Virus record (IMG/VR): IMGVR_UViG_3300041411_000178
Span: 1 to 64,000 of that record
DNA: 64,000 nt
Reading direction: 5' to 3' (one strand)
Part shown: positions 6,101 to 40,400 of the stretch, in pieces
Layout: each line of letters starts with the position of its first letter
Numbering within the stretch: the stretch's first letter is position 1
The notes under the pieces: generated by a model
What the model was told of the DNA's origin: nothing
What the model saw: the letters and a program-made list of their open reading frames with translations, nothing else
Database searches by the model: none
Position numbers and translations under genes: made by a program

Positions 6101-8108
6101 CCAGGCTCTTAACGGCATCGGCCACACCCACAACGTTCTTACGGGCCTTTTCAGTTGGCAGGTAGCCCGCCATCTTGATGCGGTTGGCATCAGAACCCGT
6201 TTCGAAGTCAGCGATGTGTTTGTCGGTAATGTCGAACGCAGCTTTCATGGCACGACGGATTTCAGCAGCAACCTTCGGACTAACGCCCGCATGCTCATCC
6301 AGCTTCAAGAAGTTCCAAGGCGTGAACGCCTCTTCCTTGTCGCTACCCATGATCAGTTCCATCGACAGCGCTTTCTTGGCCTCAGGGCTGAGTGCACCTA
6401 ACCCCAGTTGGTCAATCGTGTCTGTGATGTTGTTGGAGGACTGAGCCACCGAACTGAAGCTGTTGCGGTCGAGAACCTTGTTAACAACGTTGTTAACCTT
6501 TTGGTCGTGAGTAATGAAGCGGGCCTTTACGTAGTCATACGACATCGGCTTGAGCTTGTCTTCACCCGTCCGGATCTTCTCCAGCGACAGGTGGATCTGG
6601 CTCATCCACTGTGGAATGATTTCGTTCAGCGTACGGTCACTGCGACGGCTCCAGTGAGTTTGTTCGTAGCTGTCAGCCAAAGTACGATTGGTCAGCGAGT
6701 AACGACTACCACTGTTAGACCACGAGTTCTCGTACAACGACCCCAGACCCTTGTTAGCAGTCTTCTTCAGGGTGTTGAGAACTTCCCACTCCAACTTCGG
6801 CGTAGGCTTAGCACCCGGTGGCAACGAAGCCAGGTACTCGTCGTAGTCTTCATGACCGTTAACGTCCATACCACCGACGTAGTGACGCTGCATGGCGTTA
6901 ACCAGCCCAGCTGCGTTACCCGTGGTGTAGGTTGCGACGTTACCCAGATCCTCCATTCGCTTATAGGCGTCTTCTGCCCACTTCGCTTGTTTCGGATAGT
7001 TCTTCTTGAACTTGGCGAGGTACTCACGTGCTCTGCCCGACTTCATAATGCGTGGCAGTTGGCTAATAAACAAACCAGCCGCAGCATTACCTGCGATGTC
7101 ACCGAGGTTAAGGGTCATGCCCTCAGTCATCTCAGTGGCCATGCGCAGAGAGCCTACAACGTCGCCTACAGCCCCGATCGTGTCACTCCGTGCATCCTTA
7201 CCGAACTTGTCGTTAATGAACTCAGAGATGCCACCGAACTTGCTCTTGACGCTGCTGAAGAACTGCGAACGGATTTCCTTACGGATAGCCTGGCTGTGAG
7301 AGGTCTTCTCATAGTCCGACATCTTCGAGAACTCACGAATACTCTTCAGTTCACTGATGACGCGGTGTTGAGCCGCTTCCTGGAACTTGTAGTACTTCGC
7401 GTTCGTCAGGTACATCCGTGTCATGACGTTCAGCTGCATGGCATCGCTACGGGCTTGTACCCGACGCTGATGATCCAACAGCTGTTCCATGAGTTGGTTG
7501 TTGCGTACCAGGGAACGGTTCAGCGTGTTCATGCTGCCGATGGTACGACCACCCACCTCGGCCATCATGTCCATGGTGCGGTCGGCGATGGTCTCCATGG
7601 TGTTGCGTTCTAGGAGGGAGTTAGCCTCGCTAGCTTCCATGGCCATCTTGACCTGATCTTCGCTGACGTCTTCCATTCGAGGGGTGCTATCACCCTCAGA
7701 AAAGTCGGTCTTTTCCCAGTCAGAAAAATCGTGGGAACTGAACTTCATCAGCTGATCGGAGATTTTATTAGGACCCCCTTTACCGAGTTTGGTTCCGGCC
7801 CTTTTTGCGAGGTACTGGAGGTCTTGTACCGTCTGGTAACTATCTCCCTTAATTTCCTCCATTACTTCGCGACGACGCTGGTTTAACTGAGCGACGTTAC
7901 TGAATGCGCCAAGCCAAGTATTGGGCAAAACCATTTTGAGGGTGTTAACCCTGGCATCGGTGTCACCTACGGTCTTGCCGACGACACCCGAAAGGAAGCC
8001 GGTAGCAAAGCTTCTGATAAAGCCCGCTTTGGGTTTATCAAAATCGTCGTCAAAGTCTAGATCGCCACCAAAGGGATCGTCGTCCCATGAATCGAAATCA
8101 TCGGCCAT
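111..8108 (-). CDS. Giant tail-associated peptidoglycan hydrolase / tape-measure-like protein (phiKZ gp181-like) with GH19 and peptidase M15-like domains
   Basis: 2665 aa; Gly/Ala hydrophobic segments; GH19 motif GDGWKYRGRGLVQLTGR; SKHALGLALDF...HVH zinc motif; divergent from vRNAP beta' as in phiKZ-like phages. Confidence 0.85.
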   Translation of the reverse strand: MADDFDSWDDDPFGGDLDFDDDFDKPKAGFIRSFATGFLSGVVGKTVGDTDARVNTLKMVLPNTWLGAFSNVAQLNQRRREVMEEIKGDSYQTVQDLQYLAKRAGTKLGKGGPNKISDQLMKFSSHDFSDWEKTDFSEGDSTPRMEDVSEDQVKMAMEASEANSLLERNTMETIADRTMDMMAEVGGRTIGSMNTLNRSLVRNNQLMEQLLDHQRRVQARSDAMQLNVMTRMYLTNAKYYKFQEAAQHRVISELKSIREFSKMSDYEKTSHSQAIRKEIRSQFFSSVKSKFGGISEFINDKFGKDARSDTIGAVGDVVGSLRMATEMTEGMTLNLGDIAGNAAAGLFISQLPRIMKSGRAREYLAKFKKNYPKQAKWAEDAYKRMEDLGNVATYTTGNAAGLVNAMQRHYVGGMDVNGHEDYDEYLASLPPGAKPTPKLEWEVLNTLKKTANKGLGSLYENSWSNSGSRYSLTNRTLADSYEQTHWSRRSDRTLNEIIPQWMSQIHLSLEKIRTGEDKLKPMSYDYVKARFITHDQKVNNVVNKVLDRNSFSSVAQSSNNITDTIDQLGLGALSPEAKKALSMELIMGSDKEEAFTPWNFLKLDEHAGVSPKVAAEIRRAMKAAFDITDKHIADFETGSDANRIKMAGYLPTEKARKNVVGVADAVKSLGNLVPDIAAQLDIHKGTGSYDALKESGLIVTDEYNRDDINMDMIKDAIASYIADPNRRNTKIPDRTPLPTRPGSFGGFPYTVPTFGNRTPVIPGEESPEGVKVQGMDKLTESLASMGDLKTAINNMGGPGNPLAQMLNLDPLNAGMTSLNEQVKRLVEMGVERNDLLTRILHNQPGSGKPPTSEDKHDISAGKRSIIERLKATNLKDMFNKGVDKLLDAQPLVLGGLLGGLAAYAIHDPKAAALLGGGAAVALAYGKIHSMSKTRAALDSEDLYEEGSDTPILEANKLANRNYYDATKGFLITSWKQITGSVKDKTNDTIIGARRLAGKLFTKENKEVLLSGLSKIRDFAMRAFKWVDPFGRAVALKDRIVNRFHQMDVYKEGEKSPVLVGKRFAAGEYWKRGEGGEAVQLTGWHEIDGPVYDKNGDIIITQEEYDRGLRTSMGVSVNKLGAASKKLGEWGLDLFNKAREKAGPAFGKAKDATVKAFKADYSPIVNSVDRIYHLLLKHWGYALEMPGATVDTPVGDENVNVPVTSVKPPKLKVKLKTTASAPSAPQEKLEIPKGAQQAQVSPEELERREAEDAKPKDASFGNVAEQIKARIRKQLGEQPEENNRLNSRADKLEKAKEKKAEDAQDALIKMSQGMGFFGGGGKKEKKESQGIFGLLKDGLGAIAGGIFGLTKFFTGTLWNSFKTLGTFANIGIKVLPFMATGIAAIAKGIYTLVSTGSLTGAGVDTFDHLRGKKRTKAERAKQLRDRKAPRGRVAKGGMKVGAGLAVGLGVDALVNTGFIDEGGALNQIGDIATTATTVIGGYQMATGVAAAAGVDIGLGAMATAATPLLAGAWTTMAPLLLNPYVLAAVAVGAIGYGIYRYVKRGSGKQFDLRMTQYGVSDPDSDLGKKILQIEEKLTNYVVIGNGRASFSKDAPLQEILQAFITDPKDKQQLGSIFSWFNGRFKPVYLTYMACLDVVKLKSLKDYDDAVSQDVYKVAKQVHQTLGSVMPFPYSIVAKIDPDTPLLGEKTTVVRCNNLLEELKKYIDRKTDTSADAEAIKTPQGVEAMKKEQAALQAVLAQPRGFFDSNDKLQAVIKAQDRLNEIDTQLAQLNGGYKVSKVVGEVFIKDLLPDNRPVDMLTGIRLACYGNDQDLTWRVEAVLKLERYCESLIVIADGGAQFKGQVGDMFGIFKEAFRLDKGDADNWCRWFKDRFMPTLLNYFNLIQNYRRGNPGVVWRSLSVTARYEIAKALVETKVEPGAGLIVPIWNVRAAPFKDAVSPGKPDRVDRMLDVLGEASTTAKLKDPEKEAGKTNTQSWAKAISPHKTGGDFTTKRANVDDVSKARNSRDVGLGGQYGTNTSRGSGTGNTYNLGGAYQTPGNSYGYQPLTGDSDTSHLDLSGVQAADGQDNGVKVPKQLAEQLIIREMLKQGFTDPRAIAEMLALTNYETEGFGRTVENMRYTTPENLLKTFREVTSLAQARALVAAGPVAIANTVYGGGKGQTLGNIAPGDGWKYRGRGLVQLTGRAQYARIGQQLGIDLVNNPELASNDPNVMAAIAVNFYKNSKLLQSITQDGNFGRAATGLNGGNELPGMPKRFQLYTSYLQQLQSGQLKADDAAAQGTNQAPSQGAGSMYGGGGSNPAPTIGTGNTPQIGAAPGGGSRNAGAYSTPPSLMAPGGGGADYSGNYGNGAPSEPGSLVGGGTGINSSGLRLKSGEAIAGGDAHPGIIRLCQLIQSQVPNFRYFSALNDAFHKNKKPNSKHALGLALDFTLTNGATGAGQAMSIVAGILRTANMGPNDFLLLNEYAKASAGATGGHVHVGFKSKEAADKFAQAAGAAQPAGQDTTAGGTVTAKDQAYDPGQMPSTPPDTTTVPTPAMKSNAPAPGGNQVAPGAGGGAIPGPYTSLPLPGQGGSTENPNGPVAAPGSTPQGSKQPLPEGYGKPVPKQQATAQQPAPADPGGLMEKLTTVVGEGTGKQDTTNQLLQQIAGLLKSMESNSKPASPAVTI

Positions 8109-8135: not shown

Positions 8136-9752
8136 ATGAAACCCACAAACCTTACGTTACTGGACTTTAACAAAATCGGTCCACCTGTGTTTCAACCGGT
8201 GACGTCCACTGACGCGTTTGAAGGCATGACCCAAAACCTCAACGAGGAAGGTCTTTATTCTCCTGAAATCTTCGGCAAGTTGGGTAGCAAAGAGCGCGAC
8301 GAGACCGAAGCGTTTATCGATACCAAATTAGAAATATTCAACCCAACGTACTTTAAAGCGATGATTCAAACAAAGTCGCTTTACCTCGGAATTATCAAAG
8401 GCACGGAATACGCCGTCTGGGACCCGCAGGCCAAAGATTTCATAAAATCCAACCTCCTCGACGGGGAGACTGGTTTCAGTTTCTTTGTGAGTCACTTCAA
8501 AGAATTGCAACCCACCCTGTCCGAGAGTTACAAGCGTAAACAAAAGGTTGAACTGGTTCAGCGCTTCAAGCCGATTGCATTGGCGAATAAGGTTCTGGTT
8601 CCGCCCGCCGGTCTTCGGGACATTGAGTTCCAACCGGATGGTTCTTCAGTAGAACCTGAGATCACCGACCTATACCGCAAGCTGTTGTTCCGCACGCGGG
8701 TAGTGTCACTGGGTAGCAAGGAAGATGGTGACAACCCACTGTATGATACGGTGCGTTGGGGACTTCAGAGTTCCTACAACGATATCGATCAGTACATCTT
8801 CGATCTGATGGACGGGAAGTCGGGTCTGTTCCAACGTCGGGTTTCGACTCGGGGTGTGGTGTCGGGTACTCGTAACGTTATTACCGCCCGTAAGGTCTCC
8901 AGAGAACACTTGCACAAAGGGAACGGGGTTAACCCGAACTCGGTGGACATGGGTCTCTATCAAGCGTTGCTGAACTTTCAGTACGTTTGTATTCACGCAT
9001 TGCTCACTAAGTACCTGGGGGATATTTTCCAGCCAGGCTCCCAAAACGTCAAGTTGGTTAACACCAAGACTCTGGAGTACGAATATGTCGAGGTCGCAGC
9101 AGCTGTTGTCGAAAAGTGGTCAACGGCCACAGGCATCTCCAAACTCTTCAACGGTTTCGGAAACGCTCGACTCCGCTCCAAACCCATCATCCTTTCTGGG
9201 CACTATCTGGCGCTGGTGTACGACGACGGTCATGATGTTTGTGTCCTGAGTGACATCAACGATCTGCCTGCCGGGAAAGATCGTAAACTGGTGACACCTA
9301 TCACCTACATGCAGCTCTATTACCTGTCCTGCCACAAAGTCATTGGCGAACAGGTTTCCCAGCAGACGCGTTACCCGGTAATCGGTATCGGTTCCATCTT
9401 CCCTGCCAAAGTTAACCTCTTGAGCATTGAAGGGGCCAAGCCGCGAACCATCCGTAACTCCGAGTGGGATGTGATCGAAGAGTGCATGCGCTATCCGCAC
9501 AACCTTGAAAAGCCTGATTACTTTGACGCCATGTCGGTAGACCCAAGTCGTGAAGCCGGTCTCGATTCCGACCACGACGGTGACATGCTCAACAGTAACA
9601 GTGTCTGTGCCGAAGACAGTAAGGCTCAGGTTAACGATCTATTCGGTAAACGTGAGTACTACATCAGCGGCAGCAATCGGTTCCTTTATGACCCTGTGAA
9701 CGAACCTATCTTGTTTATGCTCAAAGCCGCCACCAGCGGTATGGAGAAATAA
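8136..9752 (+). CDS. Virion RNA polymerase beta' subunit, N-terminal/catalytic part (phiKZ gp180-like)
   Basis: EGLYSPEIFG motif, GTRNVIT, catalytic DxDGD (DSDHDGD). Confidence 0.9.
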   Translation: MKPTNLTLLDFNKIGPPVFQPVTSTDAFEGMTQNLNEEGLYSPEIFGKLGSKERDETEAFIDTKLEIFNPTYFKAMIQTKSLYLGIIKGTEYAVWDPQAKDFIKSNLLDGETGFSFFVSHFKELQPTLSESYKRKQKVELVQRFKPIALANKVLVPPAGLRDIEFQPDGSSVEPEITDLYRKLLFRTRVVSLGSKEDGDNPLYDTVRWGLQSSYNDIDQYIFDLMDGKSGLFQRRVSTRGVVSGTRNVITARKVSREHLHKGNGVNPNSVDMGLYQALLNFQYVCIHALLTKYLGDIFQPGSQNVKLVNTKTLEYEYVEVAAAVVEKWSTATGISKLFNGFGNARLRSKPIILSGHYLALVYDDGHDVCVLSDINDLPAGKDRKLVTPITYMQLYYLSCHKVIGEQVSQQTRYPVIGIGSIFPAKVNLLSIEGAKPRTIRNSEWDVIEECMRYPHNLEKPDYFDAMSVDPSREAGLDSDHDGDMLNSNSVCAEDSKAQVNDLFGKREYYISGSNRFLYDPVNEPILFMLKAATSGMEK

Positions 9753-9756
9753 AGGT

Positions 9757-12700
9757 ATGAATATCCCATCGGCGAACACGCTGAGTCCCCTAGACGCAGT
9801 AACGGGGGATGAAGCACTCTACCCCCAGTTCTACCGCGCCTTTGTACAGCGTAAGCGTCAAGAGTTGATCGCCCCTGTGTTCATCGGGATTGGCGAGATT
9901 ATCTTGCCACGTGGGTCGCTGGTTCACTTCTTCCCAAACAACCCACAAGAGATCGGTCCTTCGATTTCTGAAGCCTTTATCAGCAACTACCCGGATGAGG
10001 TGTTTGTTGAGTTCCCGGCGAAGTACACCCCGGTGATTGGCAACGGTCGCGCAGTACAGATCGAACCCCGCAAGATCATCACGGGTTATCGTGGGTCGCA
10101 CTACAAGTACAACTGGACCAAGGACATCAACACGGTCTACAACAAGGACAAGGTACTGGTTGTTAAGAGCTACGGCCTCGCCGACATGCTCTGGCATCCA
10201 CGTGCTTCGCTGTTTATCAATTTCGAGAAGTATTACAACCACTTCAACCTGTTGATGGATGGCGTTAACGAAGAAGCTGAGCGCAGCAAACGCCGTAAGC
10301 AGTTCTACCGTATTGACCTGCCGCTGCACATGCCGTCGTTTACTGACCTGATGATCGACTACGACCATTACGTCGAAAGCTTCCGTGACGGTAAGCCGTT
10401 GCCGAGCAACAAGACCGTTCGGACTACCAAGCAGGAGAACTCCTACTGGTTGATGGACTGGATGGCGTTCCTGTTTGGTGACAACGAATTCAGTCTGCTG
10501 AATAAGCTGTCTGATAAAGCGATCGAAGATTTCCACCTGATCTTTGTTTTCAACAGTCGTGCACTGGTGATTCACCTGGGTACGCTGAAAGGGTGGTTGG
10601 ATGCAGAGATGGATCCTAAAGCAAAAGCCAAGGAAGGCAGCGCGCCAAAGAGCAACCGTGATAAACACGGAAAGCGTTTGAACGCATCCAAGCGTGTTTA
10701 CCTGGCCTTGCTGAACCTTACCCGAGGTGGTGTCTCGGAAGAGGAAGTAGTAAAAGAGGAAAAATCCGATGGAAGAGGAGAAGAAACAGCGTCGGCTGGG
10801 GGCGTGGTTGCAGAAGCGCCGGGAGCTGAGAAAGGGAAAGGCAAAGTATCCGGTGGATCCGGAGAAGGAACGCTTCCTCGCAAAAATGACAGTAAGCGAA
10901 CTGTTGATCATCCTGATCCTCTCCGTGATGCTTTCGGTGGCGGTCAAAAAGCTGACGACGGAGTTCATGAAGGGGCCGGACAAGAGGGAGACGGAACAAA
11001 TTCTGAAAGCCTTGAAGAGTGGACATCACACGTAGACGACCGTCTGCTGGAACAAGACAAGGTGGTTGCAGATACTTCGATCAAGAAGGATCCGTTTCCC
11101 AAGTTTGAAAGTGGCGTAGGGGCTGCTCTGGAAGAAGTAGCGCGTGAGGGTAAGCTGTCTGTTTCCACTCAGCAGTTCTTCATGCGTAAAGCGACTCAGG
11201 TGTATCACATCGAAATGGAAAACGGCCAGAGTCTGGCTGAATACATGGAGATCAAACCAGAGGAGCTGAAGACGCTTACCAGCGACGCAAAGATCGAGGG
11301 TAACTTCCCCACGATTCTCGACCAATCGATGCTCCAGAGCCGTGCCAAGGTCTTGAAGCAGGGTTATGTGGACAAGTTCCTGCATAAGGACATTGCCCGC
11401 ATGGCAGTCGGTATTCAAAACGCCGGCTTTGCGTTGAACGACTACAAGCATGAGCAGATCCACGGTGTAGAAGGTTCCTACGACGTTGTGACGATGCAAG
11501 TCCACCACGTCGATGGCGAACAGTCGACTCACCAGGTTCGCTTCCCTATGGTGAACAAGGACAGTTCCTTCACTGTTGACGGGGTTAAGTCCCACCTGCA
11601 ACTGCAACGCATGGAACTGCCGATCCGCAAGATCGACGCCAGTACTGTGTTGTTGACCAGTCACTACGACCGCCAGCTCATGGTGACCCGTAGCAAGAAG
11701 GTTGTGGACGATCTGGGTGTGTGGCTGAAGAAACAGATCCTGCTGCGTGCTATGGCTGACAAGGACATCACGCTCAGTCGTGGTAATGGTCGTAACCGTG
11801 ACTATACTGGTCCGCGGATCTACACCATCTTGGCCAGTCGTTTCCAGTGGATCAATGTCGGCGGCTACATGCTGGACTTCCGCATCGAGAAGCTGCTGGA
11901 AGAGTATCCAGAGTTCAAGAAGTTCACCAAGCCGGACATGTTCCTGGTGGGCGTCAAGGACAAGAAGCCGATCACGATCGACAGCTACGGCAACCTCTAC
12001 CTGGACGGTGTTGAGTTTAACACCTTTGAAGGGTTGATGGGGATCAACTTCAGCAAAGCACCTAACGAACATGCCGTGATCAACATCAGCGGCTTTCAGT
12101 TTCCTCTGGGTGTTGTGCTGTGTTACTACTTCGGGATTGACGAACTGCTGAAGATCGTTAAGGCTACCACTCGAAGTGTCCCTATGGGTACCCGGCCTAA
12201 GTTGGCGGATGATGAATACGCCATTCAGTTCAACGACGAGTATTTGATCTTTAACCGTCGTGAGAAACTGTCCACCTTGATCTTCGGTGGGATGCCTAAG
12301 TTGAACAACATCAGTAACTTCAGCCGAAGTGACCTGAACAACAAAGGTATCTGGGGTCCGCTGATGGGAGACCCTAAGGTTCGTCCTTCTCAGTTCCTGG
12401 AGATGAACCTGCTGTACAAAATGTTTATCGACCCGGTCACTAAAGACCAGTTGAAACGCATGGGTTACAGCGAGTCCTTCCATTACCTGCTGATCGATGC
12501 TGCGAAGCTGCTGGAAACCGACTACACCCCTCACGAGGTGGAATTGGAAGAACAGCGGATCGTTGGCTATGAGCGTTTCGCAGGGCACTTCTACAAGGTC
12601 ATGGTAGGGGCATCGCGTCAGTTCTTCAACAAAGGTAAGGGTCGTAAGCAGAAGCTGGAGATCAACCCTGAAGCTGTGATCATGAACATCCTCAAGGACA

Positions 12701-14127
12701 CCTCGGTTAACCGGGTAGAGGAAGTGGGCCCAATTCACCAGTGTAAGGATCAGGAGGAACTGACCTTTGGTGGCACGGGTGGTCGCAGTGAGATCACGGT
12801 AGTTAAGCGCGCACGTGTGCAGCTGAAAAGCTATCGTGGCAAGATCTCTGAGGCGAACAAGGATAGCGGCAAGGTAGGTTTCGTAACTTACTTGACGTCT
12901 GATCCTTTGATCCTCGACTACCGCGGCAACATCGACACCAAGAGTAAACCATCTGCTACCTCGCTGTATTCGGTAACAGGTAACCTCGCATTCGGTATGA
13001 ACAAGGACGATACCAAGCGTGGCATGTTTACCTCGACTCAGGCGTCTCAAGCGGTCAGTGCTGAAAACTACACCATGCCAATCACCCGCACAGGCTATGA
13101 CAACATCATTGCTCAGCGGACCTCTGAACTCTACAGCAAGGTTGCTAAAGAGGCCGGTAAGGTAACGGCTGTTGAAGACGACCATATGGAAATCACCTAT
13201 AACGACGGCAACACTGAAAAGTATCCGTTGGGTTTGGTTATTGGTGAAGCCAGTGGTGAGTACCATCGTCACACCCGCGTTACCGATATGAAAGTCGGCG
13301 ACAAGTTTACGAAGGGTGAGATCCTGGGTTGGGACAAGCAGTGGTTTGCGCGTGACCCATTCTGCCCAGGACAAGTGGTTTGGAAAAACGGTCGTCAAGT
13401 TCGTATTGCGCTGGTAGAAGACCAAGACACCTACGAAGACTCCATCGCGGTTTCGAAAGAGATCATGGAGGAATCGATTACCCCGTTCCTGACGAAGAAC
13501 ACCTTCGCCGTGGATGTGGATAAAGTTGTGACCTTCCGGGTTAAACTAGGTGACCAAATCGACTACGACGCGATTTTATGCGAAATTGAAGAGAGCCACC
13601 TGGCGGGGGCTGGAGAGGCGAATAGCCAAGTCGGGGATATCAACCGTCTGGGGATCAAGCAGATCCGCTCCAAGTACCACGGCCAGGTCGTGAAGATCGA
13701 GGTGATGTACAACTCACCCGCGGAAAAGATGTCGGACAGTGTGCGTAAACTGGTTGCTGCTTCGGACAAAGAACGCAAGCGCATGTCTTCGATTGATGGC
13801 AGTGTTCCAACAGGTAGCGTGAGTAACAACCTCAACGTGAGTAAGCCTGTATTGTCACCAGGAAAAGTATTGTTTACTGTCTACGTCGAATCCATGGATG
13901 GTTCTACCACCTCGGACAAATACGTAATTGCCAACCAGATGAAAGGTACTGTCAACGGTGTAATGAAGAAGCCGTTGATGACTCAAGACGGTCGTGTGGT
14001 AGACGTCAAGTGTAGCTTTAAAGGCGGCTTTAACCGCATGGTACTGAGCTTACGGGATCGACTGGGTACAAGTGAACTGTCGGTTGGGGTTACCAAACAG
14101 GCTATTGCCATTTACAGAGGTAAGTAA
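9757..14127 (+). CDS. Virion RNA polymerase beta subunit (phiKZ gp178-like)
   Basis: 1456 aa; TFGGTGGRS, SGKVG, DDTKRGMF, TYEDSI, DKYVIANQMKG beta-like motifs; adjacent to beta'. Confidence 0.9.
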   Translation: MNIPSANTLSPLDAVTGDEALYPQFYRAFVQRKRQELIAPVFIGIGEIILPRGSLVHFFPNNPQEIGPSISEAFISNYPDEVFVEFPAKYTPVIGNGRAVQIEPRKIITGYRGSHYKYNWTKDINTVYNKDKVLVVKSYGLADMLWHPRASLFINFEKYYNHFNLLMDGVNEEAERSKRRKQFYRIDLPLHMPSFTDLMIDYDHYVESFRDGKPLPSNKTVRTTKQENSYWLMDWMAFLFGDNEFSLLNKLSDKAIEDFHLIFVFNSRALVIHLGTLKGWLDAEMDPKAKAKEGSAPKSNRDKHGKRLNASKRVYLALLNLTRGGVSEEEVVKEEKSDGRGEETASAGGVVAEAPGAEKGKGKVSGGSGEGTLPRKNDSKRTVDHPDPLRDAFGGGQKADDGVHEGAGQEGDGTNSESLEEWTSHVDDRLLEQDKVVADTSIKKDPFPKFESGVGAALEEVAREGKLSVSTQQFFMRKATQVYHIEMENGQSLAEYMEIKPEELKTLTSDAKIEGNFPTILDQSMLQSRAKVLKQGYVDKFLHKDIARMAVGIQNAGFALNDYKHEQIHGVEGSYDVVTMQVHHVDGEQSTHQVRFPMVNKDSSFTVDGVKSHLQLQRMELPIRKIDASTVLLTSHYDRQLMVTRSKKVVDDLGVWLKKQILLRAMADKDITLSRGNGRNRDYTGPRIYTILASRFQWINVGGYMLDFRIEKLLEEYPEFKKFTKPDMFLVGVKDKKPITIDSYGNLYLDGVEFNTFEGLMGINFSKAPNEHAVINISGFQFPLGVVLCYYFGIDELLKIVKATTRSVPMGTRPKLADDEYAIQFNDEYLIFNRREKLSTLIFGGMPKLNNISNFSRSDLNNKGIWGPLMGDPKVRPSQFLEMNLLYKMFIDPVTKDQLKRMGYSESFHYLLIDAAKLLETDYTPHEVELEEQRIVGYERFAGHFYKVMVGASRQFFNKGKGRKQKLEINPEAVIMNILKDTSVNRVEEVGPIHQCKDQEELTFGGTGGRSEITVVKRARVQLKSYRGKISEANKDSGKVGFVTYLTSDPLILDYRGNIDTKSKPSATSLYSVTGNLAFGMNKDDTKRGMFTSTQASQAVSAENYTMPITRTGYDNIIAQRTSELYSKVAKEAGKVTAVEDDHMEITYNDGNTEKYPLGLVIGEASGEYHRHTRVTDMKVGDKFTKGEILGWDKQWFARDPFCPGQVVWKNGRQVRIALVEDQDTYEDSIAVSKEIMEESITPFLTKNTFAVDVDKVVTFRVKLGDQIDYDAILCEIEESHLAGAGEANSQVGDINRLGIKQIRSKYHGQVVKIEVMYNSPAEKMSDSVRKLVAASDKERKRMSSIDGSVPTGSVSNNLNVSKPVLSPGKVLFTVYVESMDGSTTSDKYVIANQMKGTVNGVMKKPLMTQDGRVVDVKCSFKGGFNRMVLSLRDRLGTSELSVGVTKQAIAIYRGK
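10769..11035 (+). CDS. Putative overprinted small membrane protein in the +1 frame inside vRNAP beta (holin/antiholin candidate)
   Basis: 88 aa; GAGGA SD 8 nt before ATG; basic N-terminus, one hydrophobic helix LLIILILSVMLSVAV, charged C-terminus; coincides with a low-complexity linker of the host gene. Confidence 0.5.
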   Translation: MEEEKKQRRLGAWLQKRRELRKGKAKYPVDPEKERFLAKMTVSELLIILILSVMLSVAVKKLTTEFMKGPDKRETEQILKALKSGHHT

Positions 14128-22533: not shown

Positions 22534-23343
22534 ATGTTGTTGAAGTCTATCCCTAAAGGTGCTGAATTCACTTACGGCGTTCACGGCCCATCCCTGGCCG
22601 CTATCGTGCCTGACAACGCGTTCACGCTGTTGCCTCAGGAACAGCTGCGTGACGCTGTACGTAAACTCGACGAAATCACCATGGGCTCCGTGCGCGCTCT
22701 GAACGCCAAGTTCGAGTTGCTGCGCCAAGGCATCGGTTACATCCTGTTCTACCGCATCGAACGTGATTTCAGTGGTAACAGTTTTGTTCAATTCATGGTC
22801 TATCGCCGCAACAAGACCAACAACGAAGGTCAGCTGGTCTCCAAACTGAGCCTGGGGGCTGGCGGTCATATCGAAGGTTTCGACGTGTCCTACCACCGGA
22901 TCATTAAAGACGAGTTGCTGCACGGGACTCCGATCATCGATATGGGTGAAACCACCGACGATTCCGTTGATCGTGAGGGCGGTGAAGAAGTCAAGCTGTT
23001 CGACAAAGATGACCAGAACGTTACTGGCGATGTCATGGTCGATGCCAAAGAAGGCCCGTTCAACAAGATCGGCTTCGTGATGGACAGCAAGCCTGAAGAG
23101 AAAGGCTACGTCGGCAACATCCATTACGGTGTGGTGTACGCCATCGACGCTTCTGAAGCTGTTCGCTTCGAAATGGCTGAGCCTCAGAACGACGCTGTTG
23201 CCTGGGCGTGTGCTGACGACCTCAAGAACGGCGACCTGTTCAAGAACCCTGAATGCCCGCTCGAACCGTGGTCGCAAATGATCGCTGATCAAATCGATGC
23301 GGTTGAAGACTACATCCTGACGCACTTCGCGCCGGCGGCCTAA
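22534..23343 (+). CDS. NUDIX-fold phosphoesterase (COG4112/YmaB-like)
   Basis: LRQGIGY, SLGAGGHI, REGGEEV (Nudix box variant), VGNIHYGVV, LEPWSQ motifs. Confidence 0.75.
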   Translation: MLLKSIPKGAEFTYGVHGPSLAAIVPDNAFTLLPQEQLRDAVRKLDEITMGSVRALNAKFELLRQGIGYILFYRIERDFSGNSFVQFMVYRRNKTNNEGQLVSKLSLGAGGHIEGFDVSYHRIIKDELLHGTPIIDMGETTDDSVDREGGEEVKLFDKDDQNVTGDVMVDAKEGPFNKIGFVMDSKPEEKGYVGNIHYGVVYAIDASEAVRFEMAEPQNDAVAWACADDLKNGDLFKNPECPLEPWSQMIADQIDAVEDYILTHFAPAA

Positions 23344-23351
23344 CCGCAATG

Positions 23352-23388
23352 CACTGCCCTCTTCGGAGGGTGGTGTTTATTTTTTTGT
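23352..23388 (+). terminator. Intrinsic terminator with cUUCGg loop
   Basis: CACTGCCCTC-TTCG-GAGGGTGGTG followed by a T-run. Confidence 0.85.
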
Positions 23389-23406
23389 CATGTGGGGGAT
23401 TTATTA

Positions 23407-23838
23407 ATGGTCGTTAGAAGTAAAGAAGTTTCTCCTGAGCTGCGATCCTTATACGAGGAAACAATACAGGTGTTCACCAAAGACATTACTGGTACATTTA
23501 TAGGCGGGATTGTCGTTGCAATAGTTCCCATGGAACATTGGTCACCCAATATTTACTTTTACGATTTCGCTAAACGTCGTGACCCAATTGCCGAGATCGG
23601 TAGTGGTGGGCAAAGTCTAGTGTTCCGACCTTACTCAGTTAAGGGTCATAACGGCGACGTTTATCTTGATGAATCCATTGTGTTAGCACAGATGCAAGTC
23701 TTACCTGAATTGATAAGAATGAGAATCCAGGAAGTACAAGCGTTAGAACTGGGTGTAGCGGTAAGGCACGTTCACAAGTTTACAGATCCCAATTACGTAC
23801 CACCCCAACAGAAAAAGAAGCAGGGACGGAATAAATAA
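23407..23838 (+). CDS. Hypothetical protein
   Basis: GGGGGA SD; TAATG overlap with the next gene. Confidence 0.65.
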   Translation: MVVRSKEVSPELRSLYEETIQVFTKDITGTFIGGIVVAIVPMEHWSPNIYFYDFAKRRDPIAEIGSGGQSLVFRPYSVKGHNGDVYLDESIVLAQMQVLPELIRMRIQEVQALELGVAVRHVHKFTDPNYVPPQQKKKQGRNK

Positions 23839-24776
23839 TGTCAGAAGTTAACGTTGCTTTCAGTTCGGGTATTGATTCAACTGCTTTGCTGGTAATGGGT
23901 CTGCGTCGGGGGTTTCGTGTGAACCTGCACATGATCAACGTGTCTGGTATTCCTGAGACGATGATGTACGAAGCGTACACGATGTGGCGTATCATTGAAG
24001 AGGTCAAGAAGATGACCTTCAAGAGTGGGAGTATCGGGACTGTTTCTTACAGCTTTGAATCACCCTTCCCGGCTCGTACGAAGGGCGGTACTGAAGACCA
24101 AGTCTGTAACTCCATTGTACAACAACTCGCCACTGTCTTGGGCATGGTGGATATTCGGCGGATGAACTATGACCAATGCCCAGGGACCTGGATTGGGTGG
24201 AACAAAGCAGATGCTTCCGAATCCTCCCTAATTGAATGGGATCACACCGAGCAAGATTACGAAGACCTTGTTACTAAGGTTCCAGCTATGATCGGTCGTC
24301 TTGGTAATGCGGACAACCTGGAAACGCCTTTCCGTATGCCGTTGTGGGATTTGAGCAAGAAAGAGATCTACGCTATCTTGCCACCAGAGTTGAAAGCACT
24401 GACTTTGGTAAACGGCAAAGCCTATGTTGATCCTGAGAAGAACAAGGCGACGTATAACGCCTATCCACACAAGCTTAAGGAACTTGCTGAGCAGCTGGAT
24501 ATGGAAATGCCAGAACACTGGGCTGTTGATCTAACCGACATTCCTGCGCACATCCGCATTATGTGCGGCTATGGTCTACCATCTGATGTGGGGTTGTCCG
24601 ATGATGCGTTACCACTTGTTCTTGAGCTGAGCAAGTTGTTCTCGTGGAAATACAACATTACTTTTGAAAAGGCCGAGAAAAGTAACGCTGTCAGCAACTT
24701 CAAGTATTTCGTAGACAACCACATTGAACTGGTTGGTAAACTCTCCGCATTTAAGAAAGAGGAAGCAGTCGCATGA
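23838..24776 (+). CDS. QueC-like PP-loop (adenine nucleotide alpha-hydrolase) protein
   Basis: N-terminal VAFSSGIDST PP-loop; PLWDLSKKEI motif; no CxxCxxC zinc site. Confidence 0.7.
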   Translation: MSEVNVAFSSGIDSTALLVMGLRRGFRVNLHMINVSGIPETMMYEAYTMWRIIEEVKKMTFKSGSIGTVSYSFESPFPARTKGGTEDQVCNSIVQQLATVLGMVDIRRMNYDQCPGTWIGWNKADASESSLIEWDHTEQDYEDLVTKVPAMIGRLGNADNLETPFRMPLWDLSKKEIYAILPPELKALTLVNGKAYVDPEKNKATYNAYPHKLKELAEQLDMEMPEHWAVDLTDIPAHIRIMCGYGLPSDVGLSDDALPLVLELSKLFSWKYNITFEKAEKSNAVSNFKYFVDNHIELVGKLSAFKKEEAVA

Positions 24777-25543
24777 AGGGGCACTTAATTGTTGTAGAGG
24801 GCCTAGGAGGCTCTGGAAAGACCAGTGTCTTGGATCGCATGGAAATGCAGCTGCAACAGGCTAACGTTCCTTACATCCGCACCCGTGAGCCCGGCGGTAC
24901 CTTTGCTGCCGAGTATCTGCGCAAATTGTGTCGCGAAGGCATTCCGGATAACCCAGGTAAGTTGGACCCTATGACGGTGGCATTGCTGTTCAATGCTGCT
25001 CGTTCTGAAAACATCAAGGACGTAATCAAACCAGCGCTGGCAGCAGGTAAAGTGGTTCTGTGTGATCGCTTCTGTGATGCAACGTTTGCCTTCCAACATG
25101 AGGCCGGTCTGAAGAATCTGCTCGACCTTCATCTGGCGGCACACGGTGATTTCTTCCCGGACCTTACTTTCCTGTTGGACGGCGACCCTGCGATCTTCCA
25201 ACGCCGGATTACCCCTGAAGAAATGGCCAGCGATCAGTTTGACTCCATGGGAATGGAGAAGCTGAACATCGCCCGCAAGAACTTCGTAAACCTGACCAAG
25301 TTCCGAATTCACGACGGCCGTTACGTTTTGGTTAACGCTGAAGTTAACCAAGACCAGGTCTACGCGCAGATCCTCCCTGATCTGATGGGTGTCATTGACC
25401 GGATGAAACAACGCCCGGATCCAGTGCCGGCACCAACATTAGACCAGCTGTTGGAGCTTTCGCAGAAGTCCACAAAGATGTTAGAAGGTCTGGTTGAGAC
25501 TTACACCCCTACCGACCGTCCCGCGGTGTCGATCAAGGACTAG
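24773..25543 (+). CDS. tmk: Thymidylate kinase
   Basis: VEGLGGSGKT P-loop, TREPGGT, LCDRF, PDLTFLLD. Confidence 0.92.
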   Translation: MKGHLIVVEGLGGSGKTSVLDRMEMQLQQANVPYIRTREPGGTFAAEYLRKLCREGIPDNPGKLDPMTVALLFNAARSENIKDVIKPALAAGKVVLCDRFCDATFAFQHEAGLKNLLDLHLAAHGDFFPDLTFLLDGDPAIFQRRITPEEMASDQFDSMGMEKLNIARKNFVNLTKFRIHDGRYVLVNAEVNQDQVYAQILPDLMGVIDRMKQRPDPVPAPTLDQLLELSQKSTKMLEGLVETYTPTDRPAVSIKD

Positions 25544-25573: not shown

Positions 25574-25762
25574 ATGACACCTGATGACGAAATGCGCCAA
25601 CGGCTTCACCTGGATTCCCTGGGCAAGGTCTATTCGACTGTTCCACCGGAACGTAACTCCTGGAGCCCTCAAGGCTTGAAGGAAGATCCGAACTTTGTAA
25701 AACGTGCTGAACCGCCTAAGCAGTTCGGTTACGGGATGGAACTGAATCTCCCCAAACGTTAA
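25574..25762 (+). CDS. Small hypothetical protein
   Basis: 62 aa, GAGG SD, followed by a terminator. Confidence 0.55.
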   Translation: MTPDDEMRQRLHLDSLGKVYSTVPPERNSWSPQGLKEDPNFVKRAEPPKQFGYGMELNLPKR

Positions 25763-25770
25763 CTCGTTAT

Positions 25771-25811
25771 TATACCTACCTAGCCCGTAATAGGCTAGGT
25801 AGGTATATTTA
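25771..25811 (+). terminator. Terminator, 15-bp perfect stem
   Basis: TATACCTACCTAGCC-CGTAATA-GGCTAGGTAGGTATA. Confidence 0.8.
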
Positions 25812-37476: not shown

Positions 37477-40400
37477 ATGGACACAACTGAATCTGACAAT
37501 ACATCAGCCGAAGCACGGCTAAAGTTTGCAAAAGAGTTAGTGGAGTATTTGGGTGCTCAGAATCTGCCACCTGAGCTGATCGACGATCGCAAGAACCGGG
37601 TGGATTGGGAAAAGCGTACCGAAGACGAATTGGTCATGGCTCACTTCAATGAAGACAGCCTGAGCAAGATCAAGACCGTTCGTTTCCTTAAGGACTTTCC
37701 TCGTTACCAGGCGGCCGCTGACCGCACTACCAAGAACACCAGCTTTATCCGGACGGCAGAGATCTTCCGGCAGCAGGGGATCAAGAACTACTTCTTCCTG
37801 CTGCAACTGAACAACCCGGCTTTGATCGGGGTGGACCCGTACGACGAGAACTTGACCAACGAACAGAAGGTCATGGTCATGCACGAATGTGAGACCAACT
37901 TCTGGTATTTCCTTCGTGAGGTTTGTAAGCTGCGCGCTGATCGTCAGTTCTTGGCTAACCGGGGTAACATCAGTTTCATCTGGAACTACCTGAACCACAT
38001 CACCCAGTACATGATCATGCCTCGTCAACAAGGCAAGTACCAGGACGATAACGATAAGGTTCGTAAAGCAGACGGGACCTGGGTGCGTATCGGTGATCTG
38101 CAAGCGGGTGATCAAGTCATCGACCGTTACGGTAAAGAGTCCACGGTAATTGGTATCCATGCTCAAGGCATTAAGCGCTTGTACCGGGTTCACACCAGTG
38201 ACGGTCGTTATGTCAGCGCAGGACCTGAGCACCTCTGGACATTGGCAGATCATAGCCGTACTGTAAATGACGATCCAGTCTGGGACGATTACACTACCGC
38301 AGAAATGATCACCAAGCTCAAGGATGATGTAAAGCTCGAACTCCCGTTGATCGAAGCGGAGAAGGGCGTCAAGCAGAACCTGGCAATTGACCCTTATGTG
38401 ATGGGCACACTTATTGGGGGTCAACGCATTGGTGGTTTCATCCTCATTAAGAAAGTCTCTGAGTCTGCCGATGCCTGGATTGAAGAGAACCTGCCTGAAA
38501 GCCTGGAGCTGGTGAAGAAGGGCAATCGTCGCGAGATCCATTCAACCGACGAGAATGTCAAGATCAGCTTCGATCCGGACATGGGTCTGCCGGCTAACTA
38601 CCTGGAAGGGGCTCTGGAAGATCGTCTGGCCGCGCTGCAAGCGTTTCTCGACCAAGGAGCAATCGGTGAGGAGGGTGTGGTCTACAACACCACCAGCAGG
38701 CTTGTAGGCGGTCACGTTCAGTACCTGGCCCGTAGCTTGGGCGGTACGGCTTCCAAAGCGGGTAGCAAGATTACAGTTACACTGCCGCATTCGATGGCAC
38801 TGTTCAAGTACAAGCATGTTGAGGAAGAGTTCGTTTTCCCTAACCGTTTGTTTGTAGAGCGCATCGAGTATCATGGTGAAGCACCGTGCACCTGCATTGA
38901 GGTGGATAACGAAGATCACCTTTATGTCACCGACGACTTCCTGGTCACGCACAACACGGTCTCCGTGCAAGTGATTGCGTTCTGGTTGACGTACATCATG
39001 GGGCGTGGCTACAAGTCTCACCTGGTAACCCTGAAGTCGGATAACCGTGCTCAGTTCATTGACGCGATCAAGAAGATCCGGACATGTCTGCCGAAGTACC
39101 TGGTTAACCCAACCTGGAAGGACAAGGACGCGGGTAACTACCTGACGTATAAAGCGTTTGGGGAGGAGCACGTTAACACCCTAACCATCTCAGTACCCCA
39201 GATGGGTGAAGACGCCGCAGGCGACCTTGGACGGGGTCTCACGGTAGGTACCACGAACTACGACGAGCCAGGTTACATCAACTGGATCGAGGCGATCATC
39301 AACGGATGCTCTCCTTCTGCTTTGACAGAGATGGAGATTTGTCGTGACAGCGGTATTCCTTACGGGATCAGTTACATCACGACACCGAACACGACCCTGC
39401 ACCCAAGTGGCGCATTCATGTTTGAGAAACTGATGACGTCGACGGAGTGGCGTGAGAAGTTCTTCGACTCGTACAGCGAGAGTCACCTGAAGATGCGCTT
39501 GTTGAAGGCGTCTCCTCGTAAGACCACCTCGCCGTCTGTGGCCCTTGTGTATAACTACCTGCAACTGGGTAAAGACAAGGCCTGGGTACGCGAGACGATC
39601 GACAGCCTGAACCTCAGCCTTGCTAAGGCCAAGATCGACTTGCTCCTCATGTGGGTTGAAGACGGTGAGAACCGTGTGTTCGATGACATCACTCGTGAAG
39701 CGATTAACAACGTGAAGCGGGATAAGGTCTGGAGTAAGGAGTATCGTGACAGTGGTCTGTTTATCGACTTCTTTGTCACGCAGCAAGAACTGCTGGAGAT
39801 GGCGAAGAAGAGTTATAATGACTTCTTCCTCATTGGGGTGGATACCTCGTCGGCTATCAACAAGGATGCTTGTACGCTGATTATCCGCAGTATGAAGACT
39901 GGTAAGGTCATTGGGGTGGGTCGTTATCAGTTGGCATTCTTGGACGACGTGACGGGCATTATCGTCGACATGTTGGCCACTTTGGAAAACAGCCTGCTGG
40001 TGATTGAGCGTAACTATGCTCACCACATGATCGACAACCTGCTGGTTATGCTGCCGGCCAAGGGGATGGACCCATTCACTCGCATCTACAACACGGTCTT
40101 CCAAGATCCTGTTAACCATGCGAAGGAATACGAGGCAGTGCAGCACACCAAGTTTGCCCACCGCAGTAAGAGTTTCTACCTGAAGTACAAGCAGTTCTTC
40201 GGGTTCATCACGACCTCTACTTCACGTCAAGTGTTGTATGGCCTGATTCAGGAAGCTGTGGGTAACACAGGGTATGGCCTGCACTATGATCGGCTTGCTG
40301 ATGAGTTGATCAACCTCAAGACCCGAGGCGACCGGATTGACCACGATAGCAAACAGCACGATGACTTGGTTATCGCCTGGCTGCTGACGTACTGGTTCAT

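What the first reader, a model, noticed from the sequence alone, without database searches (positions are those of the whole stretch)
22534..25543. NUDIX, zinc-less QueC-like PP-loop enzyme and thymidylate kinase cluster: possible uncharacterised nucleotide or protein modification pathway
Seen: a COG4112-like NUDIX, a small ORF, an SGIDST PP-loop protein lacking the QueC CxxCxxC, and tmk. The last three are translationally coupled; a terminator separates the NUDIX gene. No queD, queE, folE or dpdA is in the window. Known: QueC-family enzymes make preQ0, and homologs in CBASS (Cap9) and QatABCD act in defence. Inference: the enzyme adenylates a different substrate, giving a modified nucleotide (phosphorylated by the kinase), a tRNA modification, or a counter-defence activity. 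DNA modification would be unexpected in a shell-protected phage.
Basis: partly seen in the sequence, partly recalled or inferred. Interest (0 to 1): 0.6.

Follow-up and report, generated by a model that had tools for sequence, protein, structure and literature searches.

The report
Jumbo-phage NUDIX, QueC-like enzyme, thymidylate kinase
A soil jumbo phage related to Pseudomonas phage EL has three adjacent genes: a NUDIX-type nucleotide hydrolase, an uncharacterised zinc-less relative of the QueC/Cap9 ATP-using enzymes whose substrate pocket is rebuilt, and an ordinary thymidylate kinase.

Summary
The + strand carries four genes:
- A, 22534-23343, a COG4112/YmaB-like NUDIX.
- B, 23407-23838, a small ORF.
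- C, 23838-24776, a PP-loop protein.
- D, 24773-25543, a dTMP kinase.

B/C overlap as TAATG and C/D as ATGA. A strong terminator-like hairpin follows A.

C folds with high confidence (pLDDT 91). Its closest structures are Cap9 (Z 15.6) and QueC (Z 14.8). It keeps the ATP/PPi motifs (SxGxDS, PLWxxxK). It lacks the zinc CxxCxxC motif and the YxQxH, VPxRN and YPDC residues that hold 7-deazaguanine.

The complete 224-kb genome has no QueC, QueD, QueE (radical SAM), FolE or TGT/DpdA. It also has no ThyA, ThyX, RNR, dCMP deaminase, dUTPase or tRNA genes.

C belongs to a small family: 46 hits among 1.84 billion representative proteins, and every member whose source was seen is from a phage. The order A-C-Tmk holds in phage EL (gp198-gp201) and in 15 metagenomic relatives, down to 25% identity. 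General synteny is conserved there too. More distant C homologs (Miami, AerS_266) stand alone. ORF B is a precise, sporadic cassette insertion.

Best reading: an active adenylating enzyme with a new acceptor, possibly acting on a pyrimidine nucleotide between the NUDIX and Tmk steps. The chemistry is unproven. It is a new variant of a known kind, of moderate interest.

The parts
22534..23343 (+). Gene A: 269-aa COG4112/YmaB-like NUDIX hydrolase. The catalytic helix R147-E148-x-x-E151-E152 is conserved. A roughly 22-aa insert lies between the 'GGHIE' strand and 'MGE'. Ortholog of phage EL gp198.
   Evidence: (39% identity to EL gp198, 2e-49); phrog_8902 1e-26.
23351..23376 (+). Intrinsic-terminator-like hairpin (11-bp stem, UUCG loop) followed by a U-run, separating A from B-C-D. 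A hairpin is present at the same place in L004 and L010.
   Evidence: dG -18.5, z -4.0.
23407..23838 (+). ORF B: 143 aa (148 aa if read from GTG 23392), no known family. A sporadic cassette, absent from the 97%-identical relative L004. Present in L005 and P0139, with a faint match to EL gp199.
23838..24776 (+). Gene C: 312-aa zinc-less QueC/Cap9-fold PP-loop ATP pyrophosphatase. Residues 1-222 form the catalytic domain; 223-312 are helical, with no match outside related jumbo-phage proteins. Ortholog of EL gp200.
24773..25543 (+). Gene D: 256-aa dTMP kinase with a P-loop, LLFNAAR, DRF, TxxAFQ and a LID Arg. Its start overlaps the stop of C (ATGA). Ortholog of EL gp201.
25574..25762 (+). 62-aa ORF between tmk and the downstream hairpin. 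Its coding status was not tested.
25771..25807 (+). Perfect 15-bp hairpin closing the B-C-D unit. No U-run follows, so the terminator scan did not call it.
   Evidence: dG -25.6, z -6.0.

Best explanation
The locus is the only recognisable nucleotide-metabolism module of an EL-like jumbo phage.

A is a YmaB/COG4112-type NUDIX pyrophosphohydrolase that turns a (deoxy)nucleoside triphosphate or NDP-X into a monophosphate. D is a canonical dTMP kinase.

C lies between them and is translationally coupled to D. It is an active N-type ATP pyrophosphatase of the QueC/Cap9 clade. It binds ATP through the SxGx(D/E)S loop and the PLWxxxK lysine, adenylates an oxygen (carboxylate or carbonyl) of its substrate with release of PPi, and hands the activated group to an amine nucleophile.

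Its acceptor pocket is rebuilt. Family-specific invariant residues Q95, G120-W121, D125, Y141, W170 and K212 replace the 7-deazaguanine-binding motifs, and a beta-hairpin plus helix replaces the zinc knuckle. It therefore does not make preQ0.

The favoured but unproven acceptor is a small molecule in pyrimidine deoxynucleotide supply, made by A and passed on to Tmk.

Shown: gene content, fold, motif retention and loss, conservation of gene order in the clade, and absence of que, thy and nrd genes. Inferred: enzymatic activity, the kind of substrate, and any link between the three steps.
For: Fold. AF2 model pLDDT 91.1. VIA-align: Cap9 9nto_B Z 15.6 (174 of 181 residues aligned), QueC 3bl5 Z 14.8, ThiI 13.7, YcfA 13.6. 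All listed ESM-Atlas structural neighbours that carry a Pfam family are PF06508 QueC clusters. hhalign to E. coli QueC gives probability 91.6%, E 8e-7. The profile search of PDB puts Cap9 best at 8e-5.

Likely active. G11, S14, G120, P168 and K212 are invariant, and D125 and K174 nearly so, across 41 sequences at 17-77% identity to C.

Not QueC. The motif mapping, set against the signature defined in PMC13329287 and the Cap9 contacts Y115, R86 and D117.

No deazaguanine pathway in the complete genome.

The nucleotide context of A and D:
- YmaB is reported to have dNTP pyrophosphohydrolase activity and lies in the nrd operon (PMC5960316).
- In the unrelated Nickievirus Nican01, an A homolog sits in the order ThyA-DHFR-A-P-loop kinase.
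- D passes the TIGR00041 equivalog cut-off and keeps all TMPK motifs.

Linkage:
- The order A-C-Tmk is kept in EL and in 14 of the 15 IMG/VR loci, down to 25% identity of C; the 15th contig ends inside C.
- C and D overlap in 8 of 14 distinct loci.
- All 10 trio genomes lack ThyA and ThyX.

Precedent for a PP-loop enzyme acting on a free nucleotide: YcfA with GTP.
Against: - No assay and no ligand model; substrate identity is pure inference.
- Flanking genes U2 and V1 are syntenic in the same loci, so gene order is conserved no more strongly here than in the flanking genes.
- C homologs in Miami, AerS_266, L022 and L023 have neither A nor tmk beside them, although Miami and AerS_266 do encode Tmk elsewhere.
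- A terminator-like hairpin separates A from C here and in relatives.
- D looks like an ordinary dTMP kinase, so nothing marks it as adapted to a modified substrate.
- QueC-clade chemistry is carboxylate activation, and no carboxylated pyrimidine nucleotide is an obvious candidate.
- The two closest characterised relatives outside preQ0 synthesis (Cap9, QatC) modify proteins, not nucleotides.
Confidence: 0.35

Rival explanations
1. C is a Cap9/QatC-like protein ligase. It adenylates a carboxylate and joins it to the N-terminus or a lysine of a phage or host protein, for host takeover or to interfere with QueC-family defence systems (type IV CBASS, QatABCD). Its position beside NUDIX and Tmk is inherited synteny only.
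For: - The best structural and profile match is Cap9 in complex with its protein substrate.
- 10 of 41 family members weakly hit the PADLOC QueC model.
- QueC-family repurposing to protein modification is documented twice.
- The family is acidic and has an extra C-terminal helical domain that could dock a partner.
- C stands alone in distant phages.
Against: - The residues that bind the deazaguanine moiety in Cap9 (Y115, R86, D117 of the YxDC and RN motifs) and the zinc site are missing.
- No conserved small partner gene exists: the upstream small ORFs of different lineages are unrelated.
- No CD-NTase, QatB or TGT-like gene lies nearby, and TGT is absent from the genome.
Confidence: 0.2
2. 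The three genes make a non-canonical deoxynucleotide for phage DNA, following the T4 (gp56-gp42-gp1) or S-2L (MazZ-PurZ) logic. A strips a canonical dNTP to a dNMP, C converts the base by adenylation and amination, and Tmk re-phosphorylates the product.
For: - The gene order matches that logic.
- C and D are translationally coupled.
- No other nucleotide enzymes exist in the genome.
- PP-loop enzymes do aminate or thiolate nucleobase carbonyls; GMP synthase, TilS and YcfA are all fold neighbours.
Against: - D keeps every canonical thymine-recognising TMPK motif and scores as an equivalog.
- C has no conserved Cys for thiolation.
- No glutaminase partner is seen.
- Miami and AerS_266 carry C together with a normal ThyA and a distant Tmk.
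- The genome was assembled from ordinary shotgun metagenomes in several studies, which shows no obstacle to sequencing, though this is weak evidence.
- No report of modified DNA in phage EL was found, but no search targeted that question.
Confidence: 0.12
3. C modifies RNA, for instance a host tRNA in the manner of ThiI, TilS or MnmA.
For: ThiI (Z 13.7), TilS (12.6) and MnmA (11.2) are good fold neighbours, and the ThiI alignment runs to residue 278.
Against: - The genome has no tRNA genes.
- Family median pI is 5.5, with net charge about -3 to -21 in most members.
- There is no THUMP or other RNA-binding domain.
- There is no conserved Cys or Fe-S ligand.
- QueC and Cap9 match better than the tRNA enzymes.
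Confidence: 0.07
4. C is a degenerate ATP-binding or structural protein without catalysis.
For: In this clade the first Gly of SGGxDS is Ser or Ala. Most family members have Glu in place of the canonical Asp.
Against: The PP-loop Gly and Ser, the PLWxxxK lysine and several pocket residues are invariant over very divergent sequences. The D-to-E change is conservative.
Confidence: 0.06

Closest known systems
QueC (7-cyano-7-deazaguanine synthase; PDB 3BL5, E. coli b0444; PF06508 cluster 1)
   Same: Same Rossmann-like PP-loop fold (Z 14.8, 180 residues aligned). Same SxGxDS loop, the conserved Asp after strand 4 (my alignment by eye), and the PLxxxxK lysine. hhalign probability 91.6%.
   Different: No C(x)8CxxCxxC zinc site and no YxQxH, VPxRN or YPDC substrate motifs. 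It falls below the Pfam threshold. It has an extra 90-residue helical C-terminal domain. No queD, queE or folE is present in the genome.
Cap9 of type IV CBASS (PDB 9NTO) and QatC of QatABCD
   Same: Best structural match (Z 15.6) and best PDB profile match (8e-5). Like them, it is a QueC-fold enzyme outside preQ0 synthesis.
   Different: Cap9 keeps the QueC catalytic signature and the zinc site, and QatC keeps a zinc variant and has its own motifs; C has neither. It has no CD-NTase, Cap10 or QatB partner. It is encoded by a phage, not a defence island.
YcfA (6-thioguanine biosynthesis, PDB 9KQ6-9KQD) and GMP synthase ATP-PPase domain
   Same: PP-loop enzymes that adenylate a nucleobase carbonyl of a free nucleotide. 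Fold neighbours at Z 13.6 and 11.0.
   Different: No sulfur-donor partner and no glutaminase partner. Sequence similarity is confined to the PP-loop.
YmaB (B. subtilis nrd operon) and Tm1382 (PDB 3E57), COG4112 NUDIX proteins
   Same: A shares the 'SLGxGGH' and 'RExxEE' motifs and a nucleotide-metabolism gene context. YmaB is reported to be a dNTP pyrophosphohydrolase.
   Different: A is longer, with a roughly 22-aa insert in the Nudix loop and a conserved N-terminal region. The similarity is weak (E 0.024). The fold was not modelled.
T4 gp56 / gp42 / gp1 and S-2L MazZ / PurZ nucleotide-level DNA modification pathways
   Same: Same logic in the gene order: dNTP pyrophosphatase, then a base-converting enzyme, then a dNMP kinase.
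   Different: None of the enzymes is homologous apart from the general kinase and NUDIX classes. No modified base is known or shown here.

Membership tests
PP-loop (N-type) ATP pyrophosphatase superfamily | SGGxDS pyrophosphate-binding loop at the end of strand 1 of a Rossmann-like fold | tested here: met
   S9-S-G11-I-D13-S14. G11 and S14 are invariant in 41 sequences. All fold matches with Z>=9 are PP-loop enzymes.
PP-loop (N-type) ATP pyrophosphatase superfamily | Conserved Lys in the P-L-x4-K segment that contacts ATP phosphates | tested here: met
   P168-L-W170-x3-K174 aligns with QueC PLMWIDK (K165).
Canonical QueC (PF06508 cluster 1) | C(x)8CxxCxxC zinc-binding motif | tested here: not met
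   Only Cys 90, 114 and 243, with no CxxC and no Cys conserved across the family.
Canonical QueC (PF06508 cluster 1) | YxQxHxxE, VPxRN and YPDC substrate motifs (essential Y35, R99, Y131) | tested here: not met
   The hhalign mapping keeps only the final Glu (E45) and the Asn (N91). YPDC falls in a gap. The motifs are defined in PMC13329287.
Canonical QueC (PF06508 cluster 1) | Pfam gathering score; co-occurrence with queD, queE, folE or TGT/DpdA | tested here: not met
   No PF06508 hit for C or for the genome. Only 13 of 41 family members hit weakly. PF01242, PF01227, PF01702 and PF04055 are absent from the complete genome.
Cap9 / QatC protein deazaguanylases | Deazaguanine-binding residues (Cap9 Y115, R86, D117), a zinc site, and an adjacent CD-NTase or QatB substrate gene | tested here: not met
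   The motifs are absent. The neighbours are a NUDIX, ORF B and Tmk. C has no PADLOC hit.
NUDIX superfamily (gene A) | Nudix box Gx5Ex7REUxEExGU | tested here: inconclusive
   E139-x7-R147-E148-G-G-E151-E152-V aligns with the MutT box. E148 and E152 are invariant; R147 and E151 are at least 90% conserved. However, the leading Gly is separated by an insert, PF00293 is not reached, and no structure was modelled.
COG4112 / YmaB-type NUDIX (gene A) | Sequence similarity to YmaB or Tm1382, including the SLGxGGH motif | tested here: inconclusive
   Profile against 3e57 gives E 0.024 over 30 residues plus the RE..EE stretch. JGI's name for the homologs matches the COG4112 description.
dTMP kinase (gene D) | Equivalog HMM score; P-loop GxxGxGKT; DR(F/Y); thymine-contacting F/R (LLFNAAR) and T/Q (TxxAFQ); LID Arg | tested here: met
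   TIGR00041 117 bits against a cut-off of 83. PF02223 4e-29. All motifs are invariant in 12 orthologs.

The most novel reading that the evidence does not exclude
EL-like jumbo phages, which encode no thymidylate synthase or ribonucleotide reductase, use a zinc-less QueC-fold adenylating enzyme for a previously unknown reaction. One version is conversion of a pyrimidine deoxynucleotide into a non-canonical precursor, fed by the NUDIX enzyme and re-phosphorylated by Tmk. The other is a phage-encoded counterpart of the Cap9/QatC nucleobase-protein conjugation chemistry, turned against host immunity.
Probability: 0.15. Interest if true: 0.85.

Novelty: new variant of a known kind. Interest (0 to 1): 0.5.

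Why it matters
QueC-fold enzymes have recently been shown to be reused for protein-nucleobase conjugation in two bacterial defence systems. This locus defines a compact family with the same fold, the same ATP machinery and a completely different acceptor pocket; every member whose source was seen is in a phage. Its members occur in jumbo phages with culturable representatives (Pseudomonas EL, Klebsiella Miami, Aeromonas AerS_266, Erwinia phages).

In the EL clade it sits inside the only nucleotide-metabolism module of genomes that lack thymidylate synthase and ribonucleotide reductase. Finding its substrate would reveal either a new step in phage nucleotide supply or modification, or a new phage use of adenylation chemistry. 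EL gp198-gp201 offer a direct experimental handle.

Tried and rejected
- Megablast of the locus against GenBank phages found no match.
- The first AF2 model of C, from 12 close homologs, was unusable (pLDDT 49.7). The 41-sequence alignment replaced it.
- The search for related loci with the full family alignment failed for lack of a conserved stretch. It was rerun with 16 sequences.
- Complex prediction of A + D + C, with C as partner, gave no verdict (score 0.00). It is no evidence either way.
- A sub-threshold Acb2/Tad1-hairpin Pfam hit in the C-terminal extension of a long A homolog was not backed by the PDB profile search and is dropped.
- The idea that ORF B is the split-off form of that extension was rejected: hhalign probability 0.06% and phmmer found nothing.
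- The idea that a small ORF upstream of C is a conserved partner was rejected: the upstream ORFs of Miami, L022 and L023 are unrelated to B and to each other.
- C as a replacement for thymidylate synthase was rejected, because Miami and AerS_266 have both C and ThyA.
- PADLOC gave nothing for A, B or C.
- Literature searches for PP-loop or QueC in jumbo phages or Chimalliviridae found nothing relevant.
- Sequencing-run search found only soil and rhizosphere DNA holders and no confirmed RNA run (one 0.05-share row is a guessed RNA library).
Full report
**What is there**

The + strand between 22534 and 25543 holds four ORFs.
- A: 22534-23343, 269 aa.
- B: open from 23392, with the likely start at ATG 23407 behind a GGGGGA Shine-Dalgarno sequence, ending 23838.
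- C: 23838-24776, 312 aa.
- D: 24773-25543, 256 aa.

The stop of B and the start of C overlap as TAATG, and C and D overlap as ATGA. Between A and B lies an 11-bp hairpin with a UUCG loop and a U-run, at 23351-23376 (dG -18.5 kcal/mol, z -4.0). A perfect 15-bp hairpin at 25771-25807 closes the unit. The 276-aa ORF on the opposite strand of A is a shadow ORF.

**The genome**

The window is the first 64 kb of a complete 224,004-bp IMG/VR virus record with direct terminal repeats.
- It carries phiKZ-type split multisubunit RNA polymerase genes, a tail sheath, a terminase and a DNA polymerase.
- Its near-identical DNA occurs in soil and rhizosphere metagenomes.
- The four proteins are orthologs of Pseudomonas phage EL gp198, gp199 (faintly), gp200 and gp201, at 39%, about 44% over 25 residues, 28% and 37% identity.
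- I did not test for the nuclear-shell protein.

**Gene D**

D is an ordinary dTMP kinase. It scores Pfam 4e-29 and TIGR00041 117 bits against a cut-off of 83. The P-loop, LLFNAAR, DR(F/Y), TxxA(F/Y)Q and LID arginine are invariant among 12 orthologs.

**Gene A**

A is not recognised by Pfam, even at E<=1. Four independent lines support a COG4112/YmaB-type NUDIX.
- JGI calls the homologs 'predicted NUDIX family phosphoesterase'.
- A 40-sequence profile finds PDB 3e57 (Tm1382) and aligns SLGxGGH and RExxEE (E 0.024).
- hhalign to MutT aligns E139-x7-R147-E148-x-x-E151-E152 on the Nudix box, and these residues are invariant or nearly so.
- The language-model neighbours are viral NUDIX clusters (score 0.96, 187 shared features).

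By my reading of the MutT alignment, the box is split by an insert of about 22 residues between the GGHIE strand and MGE.

YmaB lies in the B. subtilis nrd operon and is reported to have dNTP pyrophosphohydrolase activity (PMC5960316). In the unrelated 112-kb Nickievirus Nican01, an A homolog sits in the order thymidylate synthase, DHFR, A, P-loop kinase. That kinase matches AAA_28 and not the Tmk family, despite its annotation. A is therefore tied to deoxynucleotide supply in two phage lineages.

**Gene C: fold**

C has no Pfam family. It matches phrog_8825 (unknown function) and only faintly the QueC-like phrog_1550.

An exhaustive profile search of 1.84 billion representative proteins returned only 46 hits. 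The named relatives are all jumbo phages: the EL group, the Klebsiella Miami group, Erwinia phages and Aeromonas AerS_266.

With a 41-sequence alignment the AF2 model reached pLDDT 91.1. Residues 1-222 superpose as follows.

| Structure | Z | Note |
|---|---|---|
| Cap9 | 15.6 | 174 of 181 residues aligned |
| QueC | 14.8 | |
| ThiI | 13.7 | |
| YcfA | 13.6 | |
| LarE | 12.6 | |
| TilS | 12.6 | |

Nine of the ten listed ESM-Atlas structural neighbours are PF06508 QueC clusters, many of them viral; the tenth carries no Pfam family. BFVD shows that the whole two-domain architecture is shared with Miami and Erwinia jumbo-phage proteins (TM 0.67-0.68). Profile comparison with E. coli QueC gives 91.6% probability, and the best PDB sequence match is Cap9 (8e-5).

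**Gene C: motifs**

I mapped the published QueC signature (PMC13329287) onto that alignment.
- The SxGxDS loop and the PLxxxxK lysine are kept.
- YxQxH, VPxRN and YPDC are lost, as is the zinc motif.
- These lost motifs include the residues that stack and hydrogen-bond the deazaguanine in Cap9 (Y115, R86, D117).
- In their place the family has its own conserved set: G120, W121 and K212 are invariant, and Q95, D125, Y141 and W170 are at least 90% conserved.
- The family is acidic (median pI 5.5) and has no conserved cysteine.

I conclude that C is very probably an active adenylating enzyme that does not use 7-carboxy-7-deazaguanine in the QueC manner.

**No deazaguanine pathway, and almost no nucleotide metabolism**

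The complete genome has no match to any of the following:
- QueC, TGT/DpdA, QueD, FolE or radical SAM;
- ThyA, ThyX, ribonucleotide reductase, dCMP deaminase or dUTPase;
- tRNA genes.

A, C and D are therefore the only recognisable nucleotide enzymes.

**Linkage**

In EL and in 14 of the 15 IMG/VR loci, the order A, C, Tmk is kept down to 25% identity of C; in the 15th, L014, the contig ends inside C, so only A was scored. C and D overlap in 8 of 14 distinct loci. All ten genomes with the trio lack ThyA and ThyX. The four phages in which A or C is not part of a trio (Miami, AerS_266, Nican01, FLC8) have ThyA.

Three points weaken the inference.
- The flanking genes are syntenic in the same loci.
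- A terminator-like hairpin separates A from C in relatives too.
- C homologs in Miami, AerS_266 and two distant contigs have neither A nor tmk beside them, although Miami and AerS_266 encode Tmk elsewhere.

**ORF B**

B is not part of the module. In L004, whose C is 97% identical, the same leader sequence runs directly into the start codon of C. In the window that ATG opens B, and B ends in a TAATG that restores the start of C. Only three other B-like sequences were found.

**Interpretation**

- Most likely (0.35): C adenylates a small-molecule acceptor connected with pyrimidine deoxynucleotide supply, between the NUDIX step and Tmk.
- A Cap9/QatC-like protein ligase role is a serious rival (0.2).
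- A nucleotide-level DNA-modification pathway is possible but is not favoured, given the canonical Tmk (0.12).
- tRNA modification (0.07) and loss of catalysis (0.06) are unlikely.

None of these can be decided without biochemistry. Phage EL offers the orthologs for it.

**Verdict**

C is a new, zinc-less subfamily of the QueC clade, known so far only from phages, with unknown substrate. It is a new variant of a known kind, with interest 0.5.

Noticed in passing
window 23392-23840; L004 5940-6010: ORF B is a precise cassette indel. The same leader and ATG open the PP-loop gene directly in a 97%-identical relative. In the window that ATG opens B, whose TAATG end recreates the PP-loop start.
   Followed up: partly
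whole genome G000, plus EL and 8 IMG/VR relatives: All ten genomes with the NUDIX-PP-loop-Tmk trio lack ThyA and ThyX. G000 also lacks RNR, dCMP deaminase, dUTPase and tRNA genes. Tmk is kept without any thymidylate synthase.
   Followed up: partly
window 37477-40740 (+): The terminase large-subunit ORF is 1087 aa, but PHROG terminase matches stop near residue 515. Weak primase and DnaC-like hits lie inside that N-terminal half (residues 158-313), and the C-terminal half has no match. This may be an inserted domain, an intein or a fusion.
   Followed up: no
window 111-8108 (-): A single ORF of 2665 aa next to the split phiKZ-type RNA polymerase beta genes (8136-14127). It was not characterised.
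   Followed up: no
L019 5648-6262 (Pseudomonas phage Nican01): The gene annotated 'putative thymidylate kinase' beside the A homolog does not match PF02223. It matches AAA_28, so it is a P-loop kinase of uncertain specificity. The operon order is ThyA-DHFR-NUDIX-like-kinase.
   Followed up: partly
P0030-P0049, P0071, P0091, P0092 (e.g. L010 4777-5940, L013 4729-5931): Many A homologs are 372-437 aa because of a C-terminal extension of 110-170 residues. These extensions form their own families, with no known fold by sequence, and are unrelated to ORF B.
   Followed up: partly
window 25574-25762 (+) and 25771-25807: A 62-aa ORF follows tmk and is closed by a perfect 15-bp hairpin (dG -25.6, z -6.0) without a U-run.
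   Followed up: partly
L005 6945-7273 and L008 6951-7279: In two relatives a gap of about 327 nt separates the PP-loop gene from tmk, where most relatives have overlapping genes. This may be another small inserted ORF.
   Followed up: no
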